Shown piece after piece: positions 5,351 through 51,820 of a DNA stretch of 59,898 nt. The position numbers and the translations under genes were made by a program. Source of the stretch: Octopus bimaculoides (taxonomy: Eukaryota). Numbering within the stretch: the stretch's first letter is position 1; every line of letters begins with the position of its first letter. The stretch is taken from the NCBI RefSeq assembly GCF_001194135.2, contig NC_068989.1:73686304-73746201 (forward strand), written 5' to 3'. Under the pieces are notes generated by a model. That model did not search any database and was not told the DNA's origin. It saw nothing but the letters and a program-made list of their open reading frames with translations.

Positions 5351-5456
5351 TAATGTATTCGAGTTATATTTTGGCTCTTATTTCTAGCAATTGTAGGTGC
5401 TACTTTGCACCCGTATATATATAAACTAGTGTGATATTATTAGTGGGAATTCTTAC

Positions 5457-5542
5457 CTTCATCTCTGCAACTTTAGCTTCTGACTCTCTGCTTTTGTTCA
5501 GTTTCTCCGTTATTGAACTTCTTCGTACGTTACCAGTGATAT
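5457..5542 (-). CDS. Internal coding exon (86 nt, phase 1 to phase 0) of the same gene: (D)ITGNVRRSSITEKLNKSRESEAKVAEMK
   Basis: Acceptor ccatctctttcttttcag|AT, donor AAG|gtaaga; the G left by the upstream exon plus AT gives GAT and keeps an open frame. Confidence 0.85.
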
Positions 5543-5789
5543 CTGAAAAGAAAGAGATGGTTTAGATATAGCGCGAAGTCATGTCCGCACACAGAAACCT
5601 TAACAATTACACTACATACCAATATCTTAAAAAAAAAAACCCCGGAAAACAAAGAAAGGAATGGTGTAACATCTCAAAGCAAAGTATGAAAAATGCATTT
5701 CGGTCCTGGATTAAGTTCAAGCACAACTGTTATTGTTACCTTGGAAACGTTCTATTTGTATATTTTATGAATCCTTATTTAGGCTCCAT

Positions 5790-11101: not shown

Positions 11102-12066
11102 CTACAAAATGGAAGGGAAACACGAAATAAACTTCGAAACCCAAAGACGTTCCAGCTGTATTCACCATTTTTTGGTTCAAACTTAACCAAGCTGTGACTA
11201 CGTTACGAAATGTGTCTTTTCATTATAAAGACGGTATGCCGTAATTTGAGGGAAATTTGGTTTGTTTCTAGAAGATCAATTNNNNNNNNNNNNNNNNNNN
11301 NNNNNNNNNNNNNNNNNNNNNNNNNNNNNNNNNNNNNNNNNNNNNNNNNNNNNNNNNNNNNNNNNNNNNNNNNNNNNNNNNNNNNNNNNNNNNNNNNNNN
11401 NNNNNNNNNNNNNNNNNNNNNNNNNNNNNNNNNNNNNNNNNNNNNNNNNNNNNNNNNNNNNNNNNNNNNNNNNNNNNNNNNNNNNNNNNNNNNNNNNNNN
11501 NNNNNNNNNNNNNNNNNNNNNNNNNNNNNNNNNNNNNNNNNNNNNNNNNNNNNNNNNNNNNNNNNNNNNNNNNNNNNNNNNNNNNNNNNNNNNNNNNNNN
11601 NNNNNNNNNNNNNNNNNNNNNNNNNNNNNNNNNNNNNNNNNNNNNNNNNNNNNNNNNNNNNNNNNNNNNNNNNNNNNNNNNNNNNNNNNNNNNNNNNNNN
11701 NNNNNNNNNNNNNNNNNNNNNNNNNNNNNNNNNNNNNNNNNNNNNNNNNNNNNNNNNNNNNNNNNNNNNNNNNNNNNNNNNNNNNNNNNNNNNNNNNNNN
11801 NNNNNNNNNNNNNNNNNNNNNNNNNNNNNNNNNNNNNNNNNNNNNNNNNNNNNNNNNNNNNNNNNNCTGTGGGACTCGAACTCATATCTTCTGTAAGCAC
11901 GCTATTATATATCGCTTATCAACTTCCCCTGTTAAAAATGTCATGTCTTTCGAAGTTTCTAAATTCATATAGCGGTAATAAATATTTTATTTTATATATG
12001 AGAAAAAATAAAAGTGGTTTTCAGTATTTCAAAATAAGTGAAGTTAACATTTGTTACTTGGTGAAA

Positions 12067-12900: not shown

Positions 12901-13226
12901 TTAAAAATGAAATAAGACGGGTTTGTTTCGGCTGGAATCTCTTTGATTAAACAGTAACAACACTATGCAAAACACACAGAATGAGGGAACCTGTATATGG
13001 TTGCGCGACCCGATATAAACAACTGTCAAATCATTCTGAAAATTACCTCCTGCTGTTTCAATGGAAACGTTCAACCATTGCGGTTCTACATATCCTCAAA
13101 AAGATGGGTTGAAGGGGTGGTCATGGTTGGAATGCCTTTATCCATAGACCTTCACGATCAGCGGTCATTTGTGATTGAAAATAAACAAACCATTTCTTTC
13201 ATGAATTGATTTGAAATGGTAAAATG

Positions 13227-13620
13227 TTCGTTCGTTCGTTCGTTGGCACTCCGTTGCTTACGACGTCGAGGGTTCCAGTTGATCCGATAAACGGAACAGC
13301 CTGCTCGTGAAATTAACGTGCAAGTGGCTGAGCACTCCACAGACACGTGTACCCTTAACGTAGTTCTCGGGGATATTCAGCGTGACACAGTGTGACAAGG
13401 CTGACCCTTTGAATTACAGGCACAACAGAAACAGGAAGTAAAAGTGAGAGAAAGTTGTGGTGGAAGAGTACAGCAGGGTTCACCACCATCCCCTGCCGGA
13501 GCCTCGTGGAGCTTTAGGTGTTTTCGCTCAATAAACACTCACAACGCCCGGTCTGGGAATCGAAACCGCGATCCTATGACCACGAGTCCGCTGCCCTAAC
13601 CACTGGGCCATTGCGCCTCC
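13227..13620 (-). mobile_element. Young full-length tRNA-derived SINE (family B)
   Basis: tRNA-like head ggaggcgcaatggcccagtggttagggcagcggactcg...gtttcgattccc, (AACG)n tail, near-TSD aatggtaa(a)atgt at 13215 and 13621; very similar copy at 42492-42875. Confidence 0.85.
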
Positions 13621-13738: not shown

Positions 13739-13976
13739 CTTCAGGTGCTAGGTTAGAATCGTCAATAATGTCATCAATTTCTACCAATGCACAGGCGCCG
13801 TCTTCAGTCTCCAGCCCAAGAACGATTTCTGGCGGATTTTTCACTAACTTCTTAGCATTTTCAACAGAATCTAAACAATCTGAGGACACCTGGGTTTTAG
13901 GGGTTGTTGCTGACATGTCTGCAGGTGGCTGAGGAAGTTGAGCGAATTTTTTTGGATCTTTGGGTCCCTTTTTGTG
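13739..13976 (-). CDS. Internal coding exon (238 nt, phase 0 to phase 1) of an unidentified minus-strand gene: HKKGPKDPKKFAQLPQPPADMSATTPKTQVSSDCLDSVENAKKLVKNPPEIVLGLETEDGACALVEIDDIIDDSNLAPE
   Basis: Acceptor ttttgttatatttccag|CAC, donor GAAG|gtaaga; stop-free, non-repetitive, protein-like frame between the two sites; phase matches exon 5457-5542. Confidence 0.85.
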
Positions 13977-14399
13977 CTGGAAATATAACAAAATAATAAT
14001 AATAATAATAATAATAATAATCATGGTTTCAAATTTTGGTACAAGGTCAGAAATTTAGAAGATACAATTAAAACAAAATTCGTACGCGAAAATATCAATA
14101 GTATGAGAACATAATCGTTTAGGAATAAAATATAAAAGAATGAAAAACGGATGTGCAAAGTTCCAACTGTAAATCAAAGATATTTAGGACCTGGAAAACC
14201 TTGAATGAGAAGACCGGTGATGAAAGCCAATCTAGCTTCGATCAAATACATCATCGTTTTCATCGGATATTGTGTATCGAGGATTACATTATCCAAATGT
14301 GTCCCTCTTTTTGAAAGACTTAAGTTGTAATTTAAAGGCGATTTGGTGTTTGGTACATTGATGGTGGTATTGACGATGTATGTATGTATGTATGCTATC

Positions 14400-27023: not shown

Positions 27024-27052
<29 letters not shown>

Positions 27053-27058
<6 letters not shown>

Positions 27059-27350
27059 GAAGTATATTGCCACTTAGGTGTGGCTGACCCCTAGGGGTGG
27101 ATGTTACTGTTGCTTTTAGCCCCAGGAGGACATCTCCTCCAGCTGGCTTATCGACACACTACTGTGTCCTGTTTGCCAAGGGAAGTTATCCCTCTCATCG
27201 TGATCTGTAGCACGAACGGACCCGGGTTTCAGGGTTATTTCCCTTCGTCAGCGTCCGATAGCCACTGATCTTTGATGAGAGAGATAAATTCTTGGCAATC
27301 TTATGTATACTTTTCCAGTGAAATTCTTCACTGATATCGAAAAGGTGAAA
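27053..27350 (-). mobile_element. Structured HHR-bearing repeat (PLE pseudo-LTR or retrozyme-like), abutting (TA)n at its 3' end and an N-gap at its 5' end
   Basis: GC-richer island containing the HHR, the 27173-27298 inverted repeat and several short hairpins; PLE terminal repeats are known to carry minimal type I HHRs. Confidence 0.6.
27213..27257 (-). ncRNA. Type I hammerhead ribozyme, intact core, predicted cleavage after GUC between 27219 and 27218
   Basis: Minus strand reads CGGACG CUGACGA AGGG-AAAUAA-CCCU GAAA CCCGGG UC^ CGUUCG: all conserved core bases, 4-bp helix II, 6-bp helix I (one G-U), palindromic helix III. Confidence 0.9.
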
Positions 27351-27791
27351 NNNNNNNNNNNNNNNNNNNNNNNNNNNNNNNNNNNNNNNNNNNNNNNNNN
27401 NNNNNNNNNNNNNNNNNNNNNNNNNNNNNNNNNNNNNNNNNNNNNNNNNNNNNNNNNNNNNNNNNNNNNNNNNNNNNNNNNNNNNNNNNNNNNNNNNNNN
27501 NNNNNNNNNNNNNNNNNNNNNNNNNNNNNNNNNNNNNNNNNNNNNNNNNNNNNNNNNNNNNNNNNNNNNNNNNNNNNNNNNNNNNNNNNNNNNNNNNNNN
27601 NNNNNNNNNNNNNNNNNNNNNNNNNNNNNNNNNNNNNNNNNNNNNNNNNNNNNNNNNNNNNNNNNNNNNNNNNNNNNNNNNNNNNNNNNNNNNNNNNNNN
27701 NNNNNNNNNNNNNNNNNNNNNNNNNNNNNNNNNNNNNNNNNNNNNNNNNNNNNNNNNNNNNNNNNNNNNNNNNNNNNNNNNNNNNNNNATA

Positions 27792-28589
27792 TTCGAGATG
27801 GTATCAAAACGTTTCCAGACTAGTTATATTTAATAAAAACAAAAAAAATAATTTATTTTCTAAGTTTAACATCTTCTTTTTCAAAATAGTCACTTTGCGC
27901 AGCAATACGCCGGTCACTTTTGGAATCTGGCCTGGAAGTCGTTTTCCCTAAACGAGTCAAAGACCTTCTGTGATTCGCTCCTGATCTCGACAGCGGTGTT
28001 AAAACAGTGACCTTTGAACTGTGTTTTCATCTTGGGGAAGAGATGGAAGTCCTCAGGTATTAAATCTGGCGAATAGGGAGAGTGTGGAAGCGATACTATG
28101 TTGTTTTTGGCGAAAAGCTCACAAGTGAAGATTGCTCGGTGACAGAACATTATCGTCGTGAAGAACCGAATTCTTCGCGCTCCATAGATCCGGTCTTTTT
28201 CCCCGAATGTCTTCTCTCAAATGTTTCAAAACGTCGAAGAACTCTCTGGCCGAGGAGGACGACTTCTCGATGTACAATACCGCGTATGTCGAAAAAAAAA
28301 ATCTCTTGATTGAGCTGCGGCTCTGTCGTGCCTCTTGAAGCGCCCGTACCACTCGAAACATTGCGTACGACCCATTGCCTCGTCGCCGTAAGTTTGCCAA
28401 AGCATGCTCAACATTTCTGTAGCAGAGTCCTAAGTTTAACGCAAAATTTCACGTTGGCTCTTTGTTCCAACTTCCTATCTATGACACAGCACACTGCCTC
28501 CTGAAGTTCCATGTTAGCTCTCACTGCACACGCTGCCATCTGTTGGCGCGCCACAGAACTAGCCCGGGAACATTTTGATACTTTTTCTC
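27792..28589 (-). mobile_element. Internally deleted mariner (D,D34D) element
   Basis: Imperfect ~30-bp TIRs (27794-27825 and 28557-28589); transposase pieces EQRANVKFCVKL, MLWQTYGDEAMGRTQCFEWYGRFK, VLHDDN, HSPYSPDLIPEDFHLFPKMK with a central deletion and frameshifts. Confidence 0.9.
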
Positions 28590-29240: not shown

Positions 29241-30244
29241 AGGCAATATGGGATTAAAGCAAAATCATAATTCTGTTTTAGTACCCTGAAGCTATAGTGA
29301 GTTAAGAAATTGTGTAAGTATTGAAACAAATGTTGGCTTATTATACCTTCGGTGATGCAGCTGGCGATTTTTCACGAATAGGTTTCATCCTAGGTGGGGA
29401 ATAGCGAAGAAAACGGCGCTGATGAATTGACAATGCAATTTTAAAGGTTAAAAGTAACTATAATATTTACTCAACTAAGATACAGTTTTCCAATAATTGT
29501 ATAAACTGATAAGAAGAAAAACTTGTGTTAGGAGTAAGAAATCGTATGAGTAAATTGTCTTTAAAAAGCCTGGAGGCCTCGACGATGCGGACAAAAGGTG
29601 AAGAACCTTTCTAAGATAGAAAACTGCATTGAAATTTAACTCCTATTTGACAAGGCCACTCACTCACTCTCTCTCTCTCTCACACGCACACGCACACACA
29701 CGTACACACGCACAAACACACACGTTGCTAATTGTATTATTTTATGAAGTATAATTATTGGCAATAATTCATACAAAATCTAAAACAGGTGGAGTTTCGT
29801 AATAAGCAACGTACCGTAACATTTGTTTACCGAAAGTTTCTACGGATTTCTAAGTTATAAACATGATTGTAATTACTCTACAGACGCAATTACAATTGTA
29901 GGTAAAGAAGTATAAATAACCGTTTCTAAAATTAGCAATTTGCTGTAAAGTTTAGCTGTAAATAAAATTAAATCAACAAAAATATATTCTAATATAATGA
30001 CTTATTCTTCAAACTTTGTATTTCGTTTCAAAAACAGCCTTCCCGATTCTGTCGTAGACTGAGTGTAACATGTAGGCAATTATTACCATTCATTTTTCTT
30101 TGAGGAAGAAGGCAAAAAGGCCATGTAAAGAAGTGAGCGACTCGTAAACGAGAATCGTAAATGCAATTCGTCTGTAGGCTTTTCACTCAAAACCCAGTCT
30201 ACTCTAGCCCAGGTCCGTCAAAGCAGCAGGTATATAACACAGAG

Positions 30245-41040: not shown

Positions 41041-42491
41041 ATACACATACATTTGACCAAATATATTAGTTATAGATCAAACGGCCAGATACGTTCCCTC
41101 GTTTGCTAAGTATAGGTTCACCCATGTTACTAATAACTATAGTCTATATAATAAAATAACAAATCGAGACAACTATTATAACAAATCGTAAAAAAGGCTT
41201 CCCCGATTGATTGGTACAAATCACTCACAAACCTACTCCAGCCTCCTACCACCACCACCACCTCTAAAGACGTGACATCTCCTCCTTATGTCCTTCTCTC
41301 ATTTGACTACAATGACTCCCTACTCCTCAGAATAAGCTGGTTTTGAATCACTTTCTCTCGCTTCACGTCTTATTTCCTATGTTAATTCCACCTCAACCGT
41401 GTCTGTACCGACGATTACGCCTTGTCCTTCGTTCTTCGAGTATCGAGCCTTTAAAACTATTTCATCTTTTTCCTGCGGTCATGGACACACAATTGTTTAA
41501 ACGGAATGTTAATGACATCAATCTCGGTAGGCTTGCAAAAAGAAAGAAAAAAAAGAAAAAAGAAAAAAAAAGAAAAAAGAAAAAAAGACTTTTGATTTCT
41601 CTGCACAGAGAGAACAGCTGTAATCTTCCAAATCAAGCTAAACAGATTCCATTGTAGTGTCAATTTTTTCGTATTTAAGAAACCATATTAACTCTTTTGA
41701 CACGAAACCACCTGAGACTGCCCATGGTTTTATGACAAAAAACAACTCTATTTTAAAGTAATCTAAATTGAAACCACACGTCAAAATTTTGTGTTAAATT
41801 CTGCTCCAAATATCAGCTTAATATCAAAATTATTTTTCTAAATTTCGTTAAAAGCATATTTTTACAGGAAGAAAAGATAAAAAAAGACTGTTAAAGTATA
41901 AAAGATCAAATTACCGAGAAAAAGGAAACCCATAATTACTTTAACAAGTAAACAAAGAAAAAGGAAAAAAAACAGGGGGTGGAATTAAGCAGTAGAAGAT
42001 GGGGGTGAAGAGTAACAGGTTGTGCACTCCAGAACAAATGGCGTGTTTAGCCGCCCCTCACGGACATAATTGCAAAGGTATTGCCGCAGAGAATGGCCAG
42101 TGACATTCGCCGCAGCAGCCACCCCCACAGCGCGGGGCTAATTTTCCCTCATTATTTTCCAAATTTATTGAGACAAAAGCAGAGTATTTCAATGGAATTA
42201 TAGAAACAAAAGTAAATCTCGTTTCATTTGCAATCATGTTACAGCGACCCACCACAAAGTATTGCCACATAATTGTTGATTTGGTACTGTCCGAGTAAGT
42301 ACGATGCTCTGAAGGCTTGTGCTACCAGGGTAGATGATTTGGGGTAGGTGATTGGCTCCGTTGGTTACAGTATTGTGGCAATGTTGCCGATGCTGTTGTT
42401 TAGCGTTATGTCACTGCTAACATGATTCATTGAACAGATTTATGATGAGAGACGTTCCAGGTGTGATCTTCTCCTCTCACCTACCCCTGCA

Positions 42492-42875
42492 TTGTTGTTG
42501 GCACTCTGTCGCTTATGACGTCGAGGGTTCCAGTTGATTCGATCAACAGAACAGCCTGCTCGTGAAATTAACGTGCAAGTGGCTGAGCACTCCACAGACA
42601 CGTGTACTCTTAATGTAGTTCTCGGGGATATTCAGTGTGACACAATGTGAAAAGACTGACCCTTTGAATTACAGGCACAACAGAAACAGGATGTAAGAGT
42701 GAGAGAAAGTTGTGGTGAAAGAGTACAGCAGGGTTCGCCACCATCCCCTGCCGGAGCCTCGTGGAGCTTTAGGTGTTTTCGCTCAATAAACACTCACAAC
42801 GCCCGGTCTGGGAATCGAAACCGCGATCCTATGACCGCGAGTCCGCTGCCCTAACCACTGGGCCATTACGCCTCC
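42492..42875 (-). mobile_element. Full-length SINE family B copy
   Basis: High identity to 13227-13620 over its whole length. Confidence 0.85.
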
Positions 42876-43358: not shown

Positions 43359-44090
43359 AACAAATACTTCAACGGTATCCCAGTAACACAAGCTATAATG
43401 TGGAATTACTATTCAAACATATTACAGGTTTATTATTGCAGTAATCGCAGTAAAATAGCTATAAAGCATTGATAAACTGAACTCTGTGATCTGGTTTGAA
43501 GAAACGTCTTTACACCACTGTAGCTCACGGGGATACAATCAAGTATCCTATAAGTAACTAGGTTGTTGATGAACGATGAAAAATCAAATCATTATATATN
43601 NNNNNNNNNNNNNNNNNNNNNNNNNNNNNNNNNNNNNNNNNNNNNNNNNNNNNNNNNNNNNNNNNNNNNNNNNNNNNNNNNNNNNNNNNNNNNNNNNNNN
43701 NNNNNNNNNNNNNNNNNNNNNNNNNNNNNNNNNNNNNNNNNNNNNNNNNNNNNNNNNNNNNNNNNNNNNNNNNNNNNNNNNNNNNNNNNNNNNNNNNNNN
43801 NNNNNNNNNNNNNNNNNNNNNNNNNNNNNNNNNNNNNNNNNNNNNNNNNNNNNNNNNNNNNNNNNNNNNNNNNNNNNNNNNAGCATGTTGGACGAAATGC
43901 TTAACGGATTCTCGCCCGTCGCTATGCTCTGAGTTCCAATTCCGGCGAGGTTGACTTTGCCATTCATCTTTTCGGGGTCGATAAATTAAGTACCACTGAA
44001 ACACTAGGGTTGATGTAATCGGCTAGTTCTCCACCCCCCCCATAATTTCAGGCCTTGTGCCTTTAGTAGAAAGGATTATTAGTAATAATT
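42925..44090 (+). mobile_element. Family A SINEs at 42925-43130 and 43882-44090 (interval also contains unique DNA and a gap)
   Basis: Match to A consensus. Confidence 0.7.
43232..43280 (-). other. Candidate 49-nt exon (5'UTR, poison or coding phase 1 to 2)
   Basis: Acceptor catttgttttccag|GG and consensus donor AAG|gtaagt in unique sequence; only one frame is open (HIATHKIESSVHCFP). Confidence 0.45.
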
Positions 44091-44108
44091 AAAGGCGGCG
44101 AATTGGCA

Positions 44109-44246
44109 GAATCCCCGAGAACTACGTTAAGGGTACACGTGTCTGTGGAATGCTCAGCCACTTGCACGTTAATTTCACGAGCAGGCTGTTCCGTTGATCG
44201 GATCAACTGGAACCCTCGACGTCGTAAGCGACGGAGTGCCAACAAC
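44109..44246 (+). mobile_element. 3' fragment of SINE family B fused to a family A head
   Basis: Matches the reverse complement of 13243-13378; preceded by ggcggcgaattggcagaat. Confidence 0.8.
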
Positions 44247-45177
44247 ATTATGCCTAGAGGAGTTGTGCTTATCTGGCTCCTTAACCTACCACACTCGGTC
44301 CCTCATCCGTAAAGCGGCCACATTAGACACAAGGCAATTATTTTTTATTGCTTTTTTTATTTAAAAAAAAGCGTGTTTTAAATGCCTGCAAATACTGAAC
44401 GTCATTCATGAGTTTCAAGGACACTTTGAAGAGAAGACTAAAGCTGATGCATGGGCAGGGATGTTGCTGCGTCCATGCGATCTGAAATGCAGATATAAAT
44501 GATTATCGAAATCATCGTCATATTCATTAAAAAAACAAAAGGCTTCAAATAAGTAGCTTAATATAATTTAATTATATTTCGTACACAGATATAATAATAA
44601 TCCTAACCATGTTATTTTCCATTTCCGGTGAATTGATGTATTATTAGATTTAAAAGGCGTCCCAAACCTTCCCCATTTACTCTCACTCTCTTGCTTTCTT
44701 TCTCTCTTTCTCGCTTTATTTCCCCCTCTCTCTGTCTGTTTCACTCTGTCTGCCTGTCTCTCTCTGTCTCCGTTATTCCTCTTCTACTTTCGCACAATTT
44801 TTGCACACACACAATCATACAAAGACTCATATAAACACGTATTTTCAAATGAAAACAAACTTACAAAATCATATTTTTTCATTATTAGTTCTTTCAACTA
44901 CTTTGATAAAACTAGATGTTTTCTATTTTCGATAAAAAGACAAATGAAAAAAAAAAATGCTTAAGATGGATGTTGTAGCATTGAATCATTTCTAAATTTA
45001 AGTTGTCACGGGATATCGAAGAACAAACAAACAAACAAAGAAACAAACAAACATATCACAAAACAATGCAAAACTACATTCAATGAGAGAGAAGAAACAT
45101 TTTCACAAAATGGCGTCTAGAAAATATTCCAACGAGACATCAATGAGACATGGCGGCACAGTCGGTGAAAAAATAAT

Positions 45178-46352: not shown

Positions 46353-47970
46353 TATATATATATATATAATTTTTTTTCAGAATGAGATAAAAAACCAAGG
46401 GTGTGAAGATTTTAGAACATTTATAAATAGAAGGTCTTACAGCTATTTTCAGGATATTTATTATATCCCTTCAGGAGACGGTGTGAGAAGATGGTTAAGC
46501 AATAGTTAATTTAGATAAGATACAAAATAGAGAGTGAAGTGGAGGAATGAAAATAGTTTGATGTAGNNNNNNNNNNNNNNNNNNNNNNNNNNNNNNNNNN
46601 NNNNNNNNNNNNNNNNNNNNNNNNNNNNNNNNNNNNNNNNNNNNNNNNNNNNNNNNNNNNNNNNNNNNNNNNNNNNNNNNNNNNNNNNNNNNNNNNNNNN
46701 NNNNNNNNNNNNNNNNNNNNNNNNNNNNNNNNNNNNNNNNNNNNNNNNNNNNNNNNNNNNNNNNNNNNNNNNNNNNNNNNNNNNNNNNNNNNNNNNNNNN
46801 NNNNNNNNNNNNNNNNNNNNNNNNNNNNNNNNNNNNNNNNNNNNNNNNNNNNNNNNNNNNNNNNNNNNNNNNNNNNNNNNNNNNNNNNNNNNNNNNNNNN
46901 NNNNNNNNNNNNNNNNNNNNNNNNNNNNNNNNNNNNNNNNNNNNNNNNNNNNNNNNNNNNNNNNNNNNNNNNNNNNNNNNNNNNNNNNNNNNNNNNNNNN
47001 NNNNNNNNNNNNNNNNNNNNNNNNNNNNNNNNNNNNNNNNNNNNNNNNNNNNNNNNNNNNNNNNNNNNNNNNNNNNNNNNNNNNNNNNNNNNNNNNNNNN
47101 NNNNNNNNNNNNNNNNNNNNNNNNNNNNNNNNNNNNNNNNNNNNNNNNNNNNNNNNNNNNNNNNNNNNNNNNNNNNNNNNNNNNNNNNNNNNNNNNNNNN
47201 NNNNNNNNNNNNNNNNNNNNNNNNNNNNNNNNNNNNNNNNNNNNNNNNNNNNNNNNNNNNNNNNNNNNNNNNNNNNNNNNNNNNNNNNNNNNNNNNNNNN
47301 NNNNNNNNNNNNNNNNNNNNNNNNNNNNNNNNNNNNNNNNNNNNNNNNNNNNNNNNNNNNNNNNNNNNNNNNNNNNNNNNNNNNNNNNNNNNNNNNNNNN
47401 NNNNNNNNNNNNNNNNNNNNNNNNNNNNNNNNNNNNNNNNNNNNNNNNNNNNNNNNNNNNNNNNNNNNNNNNNNNNNNNNNNNNNNNNNNNNNNNNNNNN
47501 NNNNNNNNNNNNNNNNNNNNNNNNNNNNNNNNNNNNNNNNNNNNNNNNNNNGAAAAATATGGCGAAGAATGACGTTGACTATGGCGGAAATGATGATTGC
47601 ATGAAGGTAGGGGGTCTACAGACGACGTTAGCGATTGGTTAGTCGGAATGAAGACGCAAATCGAATCAACACCACGTTTTGTGTTATTTCAAATGTTTGA
47701 AAAGAGAAAACGCCCGACTTGAGATTACAGATATTAAGGCAATTGGTTGATAACAATGTATTTTAAGAAGTGTAGATCCGTTTTTTGTTATCATTTGTTA
47801 TGAATGCGGATCTTTCGACAAATTTCCGTAACTAGATGTAGGATATGACCTATTTAGAAAATATGGATTTCTTCACAATTCTTCACACACACACACACAC
47901 ACATACACGAGCCAAATGTTTATACGTCTACATATTTGTTATATACGTCTATTCGTGCATATATATGTAG

Positions 47971-51430: not shown

Positions 51431-51820
51431 TTATCCCGATTGTCGGCAATCAGAGGCCTGAAATTTGCCAGAAGCGCATACTTTCGTGACAGCAATACTA
51501 TAAATCGTATTTCTTGTTGATGGATACTGGAGGATATGCAGCTTTTCACGGTGGCAGTGCTGGCGGTTGGGCGCGCCGGGTGAATATCGTGGCGCTCTGT
51601 CGACAATAGTCCACTTGATGCTGGGTATTTCATCTCGGAGTCTCCAGAGAAAACGAGACAGGGACGTAGAGTTCCCTCTGTCCCGGGATATAAACCAGTG
51701 CATATGCTTGGAGTATCTGTCCTTGAAGTCATTAGCTGTCACACCCGTATAGTGCTTAGTAATGCCATCGGATGATGTAAAGGCTGCTCTGTATACTACG
51801 GCATCTTTATATTCATTGAT
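51431..51820 (-). mobile_element. Penelope-like element: 5'-truncated ORF end encoding a GIY-YIG endonuclease
   Basis: Open frame ...AVVYRAAFTSSDGITKHYTGVTANDFKDRYSKH...GNSTSLSRFLWRLRDEIPSIKWTIVDRAPRYSPG...HCHREKLHIL... matches the PLE endonuclease pattern VVY..YxGxT...FKxRY..H...NST.LS...W..K.....I.W.I...A..Y.....C.LC..EK..I. Confidence 0.85.

What the first reader, a model, noticed from the sequence alone, without database searches (positions are those of the whole stretch)
27173..27298. Intact hammerhead ribozyme with Schistosoma-like tertiary architecture at the tip of a 126-nt hairpin
Seen: the minus-strand RNA reads UUGCCAAG..UUAUCUCUCUCAUC..GAUC.GUGGC UAU CGGACG CUGACGA AGGG AAAUAA CCCU GAAA CCCGGG UC^CGUUCG U GCUAC.GAUC..GAUGAGAGGGAUAA..CUUGGCAA. 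Every core nucleotide is canonical, the cleavage triplet is GUC, and helix I continues through a UAU/U internal loop into a long imperfect stem. Known: the S. mansoni HHR has a 6-bp helix I, a UAC bulge and a CAAAUA loop II that dock to give fast cleavage, and minimal PLE HHRs use palindromic helix III to act as dimers. Inference: the same bulge and loop signature plus G-U-preserving changes suggest an active, selected ribozyme. It is sense to the minus-strand host gene, so it could cut that pre-mRNA if the intron spans this site.
Basis: partly seen in the sequence, partly recalled or inferred. Interest (0 to 1): 0.9.

Follow-up and report, generated by a model that had tools for sequence, protein, structure and literature searches.

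The report
Hammerhead ribozyme copy in octopus intron
The sequence really does encode a complete self-cutting hammerhead RNA of the standard animal type, sitting as a single copy in the first intron of an Octopus bimaculoides gene; it is most likely a stray copy of a known class of ribozyme-carrying mobile elements, not a new kind of thing.

Summary
Confirmed: the minus strand of 27213-27257 is a complete type I hammerhead. All 13 core nucleotides are present, with a 6-bp helix I, a 4-bp helix II with a 6-nt loop, a 2-bp helix III with the palindrome ACCCGGGU, and a GUC cleavage triplet (cut between 27219 and 27218). It sits at the tip of a 126-nt hairpin. A strict descriptor finds it once in the window and never in 400 random windows.

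Rfam reports no hammerhead hit. A covariance model built only from a Schistosoma-derived ribozyme finds it as the top hit (22.5 bits, E about 0.002), but only with filters off.

The window is Octopus bimaculoides chromosome CM046609.1. The motif lies in sense orientation in the 15.4-kb intron 1 of LOC106875983. It is 52 nt from an assembly gap and 118 nt from a (TA)14 microsatellite.

One paralogous copy exists elsewhere in the genome. No tandem partner and no Penelope-like ORF is visible.

Folding predicts an inactive rod as monomer and a double hammerhead as dimer.

Best reading: a solitary copy of a canonical metazoan hammerhead element (retrozyme or Penelope-like lineage). It is a new member of a known kind. 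Regulation of the host gene is possible but unsupported.

The parts
27173..27298 (-). 126-nt imperfect hairpin carrying the hammerhead at its tip (helix I extended by a closing stem and outer stems)
   Evidence: MFE -57.4 kcal/mol, z -7.1. Inverted-repeat arms at 27173-27199 / 27274-27298.
27213..27257 (-). Type I hammerhead ribozyme proper, from the helix I 5' strand to the helix I 3' strand
   Evidence: the only strict-descriptor hit in the window, and 0 hits in 400 random windows; top hit of the Schistosoma-derived model, 22.5 bits.
27245..27251 (-). Catalytic core box C3-U4-G5-A6-C7-G8-A9 (CUGACGA)
27231..27244 (-). Helix II (AGGG/CCCU, with an A10.1-U11.1 closing pair) and its 6-nt loop AAAUAA
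27228..27230 (-). Core G12-A13-A14
27220..27227 (-). Helix III, the palindrome ACCCGGGU. It forms 2 bp plus a CCGG tetraloop in the monomer and an 8-bp intermolecular helix in the dimer.
27218..27219 (-). Predicted cleavage site: 3' of C17 (27219), 5' of C1.1 (27218)
   Evidence: using standard hammerhead numbering
27258..27260 (-). Internal loop 1, 5' side (UAU). U at 27212 is the 3' side. This is the candidate docking partner of loop II.
   Evidence: aligned to the UAC/U of N79
27207..27211 (-). Closing stem of helix I, 3' strand GCUAC (5' partner GUGGC at 27261-27265)
27101..27172 (-). Sequence downstream of the hairpin on the RNA strand. It is shared with the paralogous copy, so it is part of the repeated element.
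   Evidence: UniRef A0A0L8IHK6_OCTBM is identical over the 32 residues encoded by 27101-27196.
27027..27054 (.). (TA)14 microsatellite 118 nt downstream of the hairpin on the RNA strand; a possible insertion target
   Evidence: (TA)n is a preferred target of Naiad Penelope-like elements (PMC8557442).
27351..27788 (.). 438-N assembly gap 52 nt upstream of the hairpin. It could hide a second repeat unit.
   Evidence: the same gap is present in GCA_001194135.2
29347..29388 (-). Coding exon 1 of host gene LOC106875983 (MKPIREKSPAASPK), with a GT donor at 29346/29345
13740..13979 (-). tblastn match for coding exon 2 of LOC106875983 (approximate bounds). From the sequence the exon starts about 13977 after the acceptor ...tttccag; the intron 1 acceptor lies just upstream.

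Best explanation
This is a solitary genomic copy of a hammerhead-carrying mobile element of the kind common in animal genomes. It has a canonical metazoan type I hammerhead, as found in non-LTR retrozymes and in repeats related to the terminal repeats of Penelope-like elements. It sits in sense orientation in intron 1 of Octopus bimaculoides LOC106875983.

Shown:
- The ribozyme motif is complete.
- It belongs to a sequence present at least twice in the genome.
- It lies in the intron, next to an assembly gap and 118 nt from a (TA)n tract.

Inferred mechanism: in the family's normal life cycle, multimeric transcripts fold so that two units pair their palindromic helix III (ACCCGGGU). This makes a double hammerhead, which cuts after C17 of each unit and releases unit-length RNA with 5'-OH and 2',3'-cyclic phosphate ends. 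That RNA can be circularised and reverse-transcribed by a Penelope-like enzyme.

A lone unit is predicted to prefer a rod-like fold. In that fold CGGAC pairs with GUCCG across the cleavage site, and CUG of the core is sequestered. Cleavage of the host pre-mRNA by this single copy is therefore expected to be weak, unless a second unit lies in the adjacent gap or the loop-loop docking drives the active fold during transcription.
For: Motif and significance:
-.
- The structural match to a Schistosoma-derived model covers the whole model length: 22.5 bits, E about 0.0016, next best 9.9 bits.

Architecture: it equals the published definition of canonical metazoan hammerheads, namely helix I 6 bp, helix II 4 bp, helix III 1-2 bp capped by a small palindromic loop (PMC4209133). 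[quoted passage not shown]

Folding:
- Monomer MFE -57.4 kcal/mol is an inactive rod; the active fold is -49.5.
- The homodimer MFE of -120.3 is a double hammerhead with an 8-bp intermolecular helix III, intermolecular helix I and both cores unpaired.
- The dimer is 5.5 kcal/mol below two monomers.

Repeat status: the antisense ORF over the element matches A0A0L8IHK6_OCTBM at 93% identity.

Context:
- The element region (27060-27350) is 46% GC and strongly self-paired, z -7.1.
- (TA)14 lies 118 nt downstream of the hairpin.
- An assembly gap lies 52 nt upstream.
- Dispersed monomeric retrozyme copies, many of them intronic, are common in Xenopus (bioRxiv 10.64898/2026.07.22.740005).
Against: - No second copy or tandem unit is visible in 60 kb.
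- No Penelope-like RT/EN ORF lies next to it; the neighbour across the gap is a decayed mariner.
- Only one paralogue could be found, and only as a protein, so family size, consensus and covariation are untested. A segmental duplication is not excluded.
- Rfam gives no hammerhead hit even at E<=10.
- My own model misses it with default filters.
- The A10.1-U11.1 pair departs from the conserved G-C.
- No paper found in the library search reports hammerheads from cephalopods.
Confidence: 0.72

Rival explanations
1. It is a domesticated intronic ribozyme. The host keeps the hammerhead in intron 1 to cut the nascent LOC106875983 pre-mRNA and so tune mRNA output or isoform choice, as proposed for the conserved intronic hammerheads of amniotes.
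For: - It is in sense orientation, about 2.05 kb into a 15.4-kb intron with canonical splice sites.
- All core nucleotides are intact, and the loop/bulge layout needed for fast cleavage is present.
- A Schistosoma-derived hammerhead placed at the 5' end of a ~17.5-kb intron gave strong knock-down in Drosophila (PMC12550524).
Against: - No hammerhead or hairpin homologue was found in the Argonauta orthologue or in the 10 kb upstream of it. Introns there are not alignable, so this is weak evidence.
- A paralogous copy exists elsewhere, which fits a repeat.
- The weak helix III and the inactive-rod ground state argue against efficient single-copy cleavage.
- Exon 1 is used only in the NCBI model. 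The UniRef model and the orthologues start in exon 2, in which case the site would be upstream of the coding region.
Confidence: 0.07
2. It is the remnant of a terminal repeat (pLTR) of an autonomous Penelope-like element whose ORF has been lost or lies in the unassembled gap, and it is not a non-autonomous retrozyme.
For: - Penelope-like elements carry type I hammerheads with a minimal palindromic helix III in their terminal repeats, and most genomic copies are solo motifs from truncated elements (PMC4209133).
- (TA)n is a preferred target of some clades (PMC8557442).
- Retrozymes and pLTRs are phylogenetically intermingled.
Against: - Typical metazoan Penelope-like hammerheads have a long helix II (6-8 bp), a short helix I (4-5 bp), an extra nucleotide after A9 and no loop-loop motif. 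This one has the canonical 6/4-bp layout with a docking bulge.
- No RT or GIY-YIG ORF lies nearby.
- The GIY-YIG-like ORF 24 kb away has no Pfam support.
Confidence: 0.15
3. It is a decayed, catalytically dead relic, or a hairpin of another origin (foldback/MITE-like inverted repeat, miRNA-like precursor) in which the hammerhead consensus has no present function.
For: - The monomer ground state is not the active fold.
- The A10.1-U11.1 pair is atypical.
- Rfam reports no hammerhead hit, and reports only very weak miRNA-hairpin matches at 14.4-14.6 bits.
- The paralogue appears mutated in helix III.
Against: - Thirteen invariant core positions plus three correctly placed helices plus 31 further stem pairs cannot arise by chance (and the analytic estimate in the full report).
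- The motif reads only on the minus strand, where three G-U pairs make the RNA more stable than its complement: -57.4 vs -50.1 kcal/mol.
Confidence: 0.06

Closest known systems
Canonical metazoan type I hammerheads of non-LTR retrozymes (coral, mussel, axolotl/newt satellite 2; Cervera & de la Pena 2020, PMC7229834)
   Same: - Type I topology.
- 6-bp helix I with an internal loop and closing stem.
- 4-bp helix II with a 6-nt loop.
- 2-bp helix III capped by a palindromic tetraloop.
- Region below 50% GC and strongly self-paired.
- Predicted to work best as a dimer.
   Different: - Seen here as one unit, not a 150-450 bp tandem array.
- A tandem partner could only be hidden in the 438-N gap.
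- Copy number in the genome is unknown.
- No expression or circular RNA data.
Schistosoma mansoni Sm-alpha (Sm1) hammerhead and its engineered derivative N79
   Same: Segment-for-segment the same layout: closing stem, UAY bulge opposite U, 6-bp helix I, CUGANGA, 4-bp helix II, 6-nt A-rich loop, GAAAC, GUC. A model built only from N79 aligns full length at 22.5 bits.
   Different: - Helix sequences differ throughout.
- Loop II is AAAUAA, not CAAAUA.
- The bulge is UAU, not UAC.
- The 10.1-11.1 pair is A-U, not G-C.
- N7 is C, not U.
- Helix III is the natural minimal palindrome, whereas N79 has an engineered 6-bp stem.
Minimal hammerheads in the terminal repeats of Penelope-like elements (Cervera & de la Pena 2014, PMC4209133)
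   Same: Type I, with a minimal palindromic helix III implying action as a dimer. Mostly found as dispersed solo motifs. Found in animal genomes that also hold retrozymes.
   Different: Those have a long helix II, a short helix I, an extra base after A9 and no loop-loop docking motif, and they flank an RT-GIY-YIG ORF. None of this is seen here.
Conserved intronic hammerheads of amniotes (HH9 in RECK, HH10 in CTCL; Rfam RF02275, RF02277)
   Same: A type I hammerhead with Schistosoma-like loops, lying in sense orientation in an intron of a protein-coding gene.
   Different: Those are conserved at orthologous positions across birds and mammals. According to the literature as I recall it, they also have a stable helix III. 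Here there is no evidence of orthologous conservation, helix III is minimal, and Rfam reports no match to those models.

Membership tests
Hammerhead ribozyme, type I | Invariant core: C3 U4 G5 A6 N7 G8 A9, G12 A13 A14, A15.1-U16.1, H17 | tested here: met
   CUGACGA at 27245-27251, GAA at 27228-27230, A15.1 at 27227, U16.1 at 27220, C17 at 27219
Hammerhead ribozyme, type I | Three helices around the core, with helix I open-ended and helices II and III closed by loops | tested here: met
   Helix I is 6 bp and continues into the long stem. Helix II is 4 bp with a 6-nt loop. Helix III is 2 bp with a CCGG loop.
Hammerhead ribozyme, type I | Highly conserved G10.1-C11.1 pair at the base of helix II | tested here: not met
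   A10.1-U11.1 (27244/27231). The conservation is stated in PMC4209133. This is a purine-pyrimidine pair, so the helix is kept.
Hammerhead ribozyme, type I | Match to the curated covariance models (Rfam Hammerhead_1 and clan) | tested here: not met
   No hammerhead family at the gathering score or at E<=10. The cause is probably filters: my Schistosoma-derived model also misses the site with default filters but scores 22.5 bits, E about 0.0016, with filters off.
Hammerhead ribozyme, type I | Loop 1 / loop 2 tertiary docking elements | tested here: inconclusive
   Same sizes and positions as in N79: UAU/U vs UAC/U, and AAAUAA vs CAAAUA. Docking cannot be computed with these tools.
Hammerhead ribozyme, type I | Mg2+-dependent self-cleavage 3' of position 17 | not testable with these tools
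   Needs in vitro transcription and cleavage assays.
Non-LTR retrozyme (metazoan) | Head-to-tail tandem repeats of 150-450 bp, each with a type I hammerhead | tested here: not met
   One copy in 60 kb, and no tandem repeat apart from (TA)n. A 438-N gap starts 52 nt upstream, so a dimer cannot be excluded. Monomeric derivatives of such families are known.
Non-LTR retrozyme (metazoan) | Low GC (<45-50%) and a highly self-paired RNA | tested here: met
   GC is 0.46 for 27060-27350. MFE -107.9 kcal/mol, z -7.1.
Non-LTR retrozyme (metazoan) | Multicopy family in the genome | tested here: inconclusive
   One paralogue was detected through UniRef A0A0L8IHK6_OCTBM at 93% protein identity. The genome itself could not be searched.
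Non-LTR retrozyme (metazoan) | Expression as linear and circular unit-length RNA | not testable with these tools
   No transcriptome access.
Penelope-like element terminal-repeat hammerhead | Lies in a direct repeat flanking an RT + GIY-YIG ORF | tested here: not met
   No such ORF lies around 27 kb; the neighbours are a gap and a decayed mariner.
Penelope-like element terminal-repeat hammerhead | Minimal architecture: long helix II (6-8 bp), short helix I (4-5 bp), an extra nucleotide between A9 and 10.1 | tested here: not met
   Helix II is 4 bp, helix I is 6 bp, and there is no unpaired base after A9. Definition taken.
Conserved intronic hammerheads (HH9/HH10 type) | Sense orientation in an intron of a protein-coding gene | tested here: met
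   Lies between exon 1 (29347-29388) and exon 2 (13740-13979) of LOC106875983, all on the minus strand, with GT/AG sites present. This depends on the NCBI model's exon 1.
Conserved intronic hammerheads (HH9/HH10 type) | Conservation at the orthologous position in other species | tested here: inconclusive
   No hammerhead or homologue in the 28-kb Argonauta hians locus. Only exons align, and the upstream flank may not reach the equivalent position.

The most novel reading that the evidence does not exclude
The octopus keeps this hammerhead as a working part of LOC106875983. It would cut the nascent transcript about 2 kb into the 15.4-kb first intron, perhaps only when a second unit or a trans partner completes helix III. 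That would gate mRNA production or release an intron-derived circular RNA. It would be the first conserved intronic ribozyme switch outside amniotes.
Probability: 0.06. Interest if true: 0.65.

Novelty: new member of a known kind. Interest (0 to 1): 0.3.

Why it matters
It adds a cephalopod example to the widespread family of hammerhead-bearing animal repeats. I found no cephalopod hammerhead in the papers searched. It also shows that filtered covariance-model scans (Rfam-style) can miss a textbook-complete hammerhead with a minimal helix III. The sense-strand position near the 5' end of a long intron makes it a convenient natural test of whether a weak, dimer-dependent ribozyme affects a host pre-mRNA. 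As it stands, it is an ordinary mobile-element relic and not a new mechanism.

Tried and rejected
- **Rfam scans**, at gathering score and at E<=10 on 501-nt and 81-nt stretches: no hammerhead family. The only outputs were weak miRNA-hairpin hits and a spurious ClpQY hit.
- **Other copies in the window**, by BLAST and by descriptor: none.
- **Pattern scans** for CTGANGA-N14-GAAACCCGGGTC. IMG/VR gave 0 hits. JGI metagenomes gave 28 hits, all in 47-72% GC contigs, and none with both helix I and helix II paired. Those are chance matches.
- **Literature search** for the exact sequence strings: only unrelated papers.
- **Using ORFs across the element as protein probes.** The antisense 55-aa ORF found one paralogue. 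The sense-strand 51-aa frame found nothing. Exact-sequence look-ups of the ORF and of the paralogue found no contigs.
- **Newer chromosome assembly.** I hoped it would fill the gap, but it carries the same 438 N.
- **Argonauta orthologue locus:** no homologue.
- **tRNA-like SINE head:** none.
- **GIY-YIG-like ORF at 51434-51820**, tested as a possible Penelope-like endonuclease: many relatives but no Pfam support for it or for seven relatives. I do not use it as evidence.
- **Hand-written dimer structure** with intramolecular helix I: topologically invalid. I replaced it with analysis of the cofold MFE.

Full report

Yes. Segment-by-segment coordinates were verified by script:

| Segment | Sequence | Window coordinates |
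|---|---|---|
| Closing stem | GUGGC / GCUAC | 27261-27265 / 27207-27211 |
| Internal loop | UAU / U | 27258-27260 / 27212 |
| Helix I (6 bp, one G-U) | CGGACG / CGUUCG | 27252-27257 / 27213-27218 |
| Core | CUGACGA | 27245-27251 |
| Helix II + loop | AGGG-AAAUAA-CCCU | 27231-27244 |
| Core | GAA | 27228-27230 |
| Helix III | ACCCGGGU | 27220-27227 |
| C17 | C | 27219 |

A strict descriptor (6-bp helix I, CUGANGA, 4-bp helix II, GAAA, UH) finds this single site in the window. It finds none in 400 random windows with the same dinucleotide statistics.

My own estimate from base composition puts that loose descriptor at some tens of chance hits in a 2.7-Gb genome. The 31 further base pairs of the closing and outer stems add a factor of about 1e-13. 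The whole object is therefore not a chance event.

The hairpin folds at -57.4 kcal/mol, z = -7.1. Its complement is weaker at -50.1, z = -5.4. That is because three G-U pairs become A-C mismatches on the other strand.

**2.

cmscan against Rfam 15 gives no hammerhead family at gathering scores. It gives none at E<=10 on a 501-nt stretch or an 81-nt stretch either.

To see whether this reflects the sequence or the search, I built a covariance model from a single published sequence. This was the Schistosoma Sm1-derived N79 ribozyme printed in PMC12550524.

- With default filters it finds nothing in the window.
- With filters off, the top hit of the whole window is 27207-27265 (-): 22.5 bits, E about 0.0016 (rough calibration), aligned over all 69 model positions. 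The next best hit scores 9.9 bits.

The alignment puts closing stem on closing stem, UAU on UAC, helix I on helix I, core on core, the 6-nt loop on the 6-nt loop and GUC on GUC. The only deletion is of N79's engineered long helix III.

So the motif is a structural homologue of the Schistosoma hammerhead. The negative library scans are most likely a filter problem for a short motif with a minimal helix III. I still record the Rfam test as not met.

**3. Departures from the textbook motif**

- The pair at the base of helix II is A10.1-U11.1, not the highly conserved G10.1-C11.1 (PMC4209133).
- Loop II is AAAUAA, against CAAAUA in Schistosoma.
- The bulge is UAU, against UAC.

Docking cannot be computed here.

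**4. Predicted folding behaviour**

The hand-drawn active fold of the 126-nt RNA costs -49.5 kcal/mol. The MFE is -57.4. In the MFE structure CGGAC pairs with GUCCG across the cleavage site, and CUG of the core pairs into helix III.

Two copies cofold to -120.3 kcal/mol, which is 5.5 kcal/mol below two monomers. Analysis of that structure shows:

- an 8-bp intermolecular helix III (ACCCGGGU with itself);
- intermolecular helix I;
- intact helix II hairpins;
- both CUGACGA boxes unpaired.

That is a classical double hammerhead. The 59-nt core construct behaves the same way: -46.9 against 2 x -20.7.

This is the behaviour described for newt, salamander and many invertebrate hammerheads, which are weak as monomers and efficient as dimers (PMC7229834; PMC4209133). 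These are thermodynamic predictions, not measurements. Some invertebrate hammerheads with the same 2-bp helix III cleave well as monomers: 0.8 per min in coral and 0.1 per min in mussel.

**5. Where it is**

A candidate exon at 13.7-14.0 kb matches 'uncharacterized protein LOC106875983 [Octopus bimaculoides]' at 100% identity. The locus fetched for that protein, GCA_001194135.2 CM046609.1, is 100% identical to window 1-39388, including the same N runs.

The protein maps to three places, all on the minus strand:

- 29388-29347 (residues 1-14)
- 13979-13740 (residues 14-93)
- 5543-5403 (residues 94-140)

Exon 1 ends AAG|GTATAA. Exon 2 is preceded by ...tttccag| and followed by G|GTAAGA.

The hammerhead is therefore in sense orientation, about 2.05 kb into a 15.4-kb first intron. 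One caveat applies: the UniRef model of the same gene and the orthologues from Argonauta and a Logan assembly all start inside exon 2. Exon 1 rests on the NCBI model alone.

Immediately around the element:

- a 438-N gap starts 52 nt upstream on the RNA strand;
- a decayed, frameshifted mariner lies beyond the gap;
- a (TA)14 tract lies 118 nt downstream of the hairpin.

No tRNA-like head, no tandem unit and no RT/EN ORF is present.

**6. Is it a repeat?**

The genome could not be searched directly. As a work-around I used the 55-aa ORF that happens to run antisense over the element (27101-27268 +) as a protein probe. It hits one entry, A0A0L8IHK6_OCTBM, at 93% identity.

The first 32 residues are identical, so the shared sequence extends at least 72 nt beyond the hairpin (27101-27172). 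The four differing residues fall in codons 27197-27202 and 27218-27223. By parsimony, which is inference only:

- The first pair of changes corresponds to A-U becoming G-U in the outer stem, plus changes in the AC bulge. These are structure-neutral.
- The second pair corresponds to C17 becoming A (still cleavable) and G16.2 becoming A. The latter breaks the C15.2-G16.2 pair and the palindrome.

At least one more copy therefore exists, and it looks partly decayed in helix III. Two copies do not prove a family.

Pattern scans of IMG/VR and JGI metagenomes returned nothing relevant. The Argonauta orthologue locus (28 kb) has no hammerhead and no homologue of the element, but only exons align between the two species.

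**7. Comparison with what is known**

The published definition of 'canonical' metazoan type I hammerheads is helix I 6 bp, helix II 4 bp, interacting loops, and helix III 1-2 bp capped by a 2-4-nt palindromic loop. They are active as dimers in tandem repeats (PMC4209133). That definition fits this motif exactly.

Such motifs are the hallmark of non-LTR retrozymes: 150-450-bp AT-rich repeats expressed as self-paired circular RNAs, found from cnidarians to molluscs and amphibians. These retrozymes were recently argued to derive from terminal repeats of Penelope-like elements. They also have dispersed monomeric derivatives, 42-44% of which overlap introns in Xenopus.

The minimal hammerheads inside Penelope-like elements themselves differ. 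They have a long helix II, a short helix I, an extra base after A9 and no docking loops. The amniote intronic hammerheads resemble this case in position but are defined by deep conservation, which is not shown here.

I found no paper in the library reporting a cephalopod hammerhead. That is an absence in a limited library, not proof of novelty.

**8. Verdict**

The interpretation that it is special or selected, or that it acts on the host pre-mRNA, is not supported by anything I could test.

The most likely account is a solitary, possibly gap-truncated, copy of a hammerhead-bearing retroelement (0.72). Less likely accounts:

- a Penelope-like terminal-repeat remnant (0.15);
- a domesticated intronic ribozyme (0.07);
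- a dead relic or unrelated hairpin (0.06).

It is a new member of a known kind and of modest interest.

Noticed in passing
window 27917-28448 (-): Frameshifted fragments of a mariner-type transposase (for example ...SPYSPDLIPEDFHLFPKMKTQFKGHCF...). They lie just across the 438-N gap from the hammerhead and on the same strand.
   Followed up: no
window 51434-51820 (-): A 129-aa open frame with GIY-YIG-like motifs by eye. It has 1628 relatives at E<=1e-3 in the representative library, and in a few ~700-aa proteins the match is C-terminal. No Pfam family matches it or seven of its relatives. It is an unclassified repeat-encoded protein.
   Followed up: partly
window 13161-13376 (-), 42443-42631 (-), 44070-44309 (+); also 13405-13596 (+) and 42660-42851 (+): Near-identical repeated units that give the same pseudo-peptides in several places. 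They are probably abundant octopus SINE-like repeats. Several other such families occur (RPRKDERQSRPRRNLNSE..., TQNVKTDEMPLS...).
   Followed up: no
window 5403-5543 (-): The NCBI model of LOC106875983 ends ...AEMKVRIPTNNITLVYIYTGAK. The Argonauta and Logan orthologues continue ...AEMK(V/I)DAEQRQRDFEQLL.... That continuation is not encoded in the window, so the octopus model probably reads into an intron after about 5454 and the gene extends beyond the window start.
   Followed up: partly
window 27178-27191 and 27232-27245: The helix II / loop II segment is 79% complementary to part of the 3' outer arm of the hairpin. This offers a further alternative pairing that would compete with the active ribozyme fold.
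   Followed up: no
window, ten N runs (for example 11282-11866, 27351-27788, 46567-47551): Many assembly gaps are flanked by TA or CA microsatellites. The chromosome-level assembly GCA_001194135.2 keeps the same gaps, so the local repeat structure is unresolved.
   Followed up: partly
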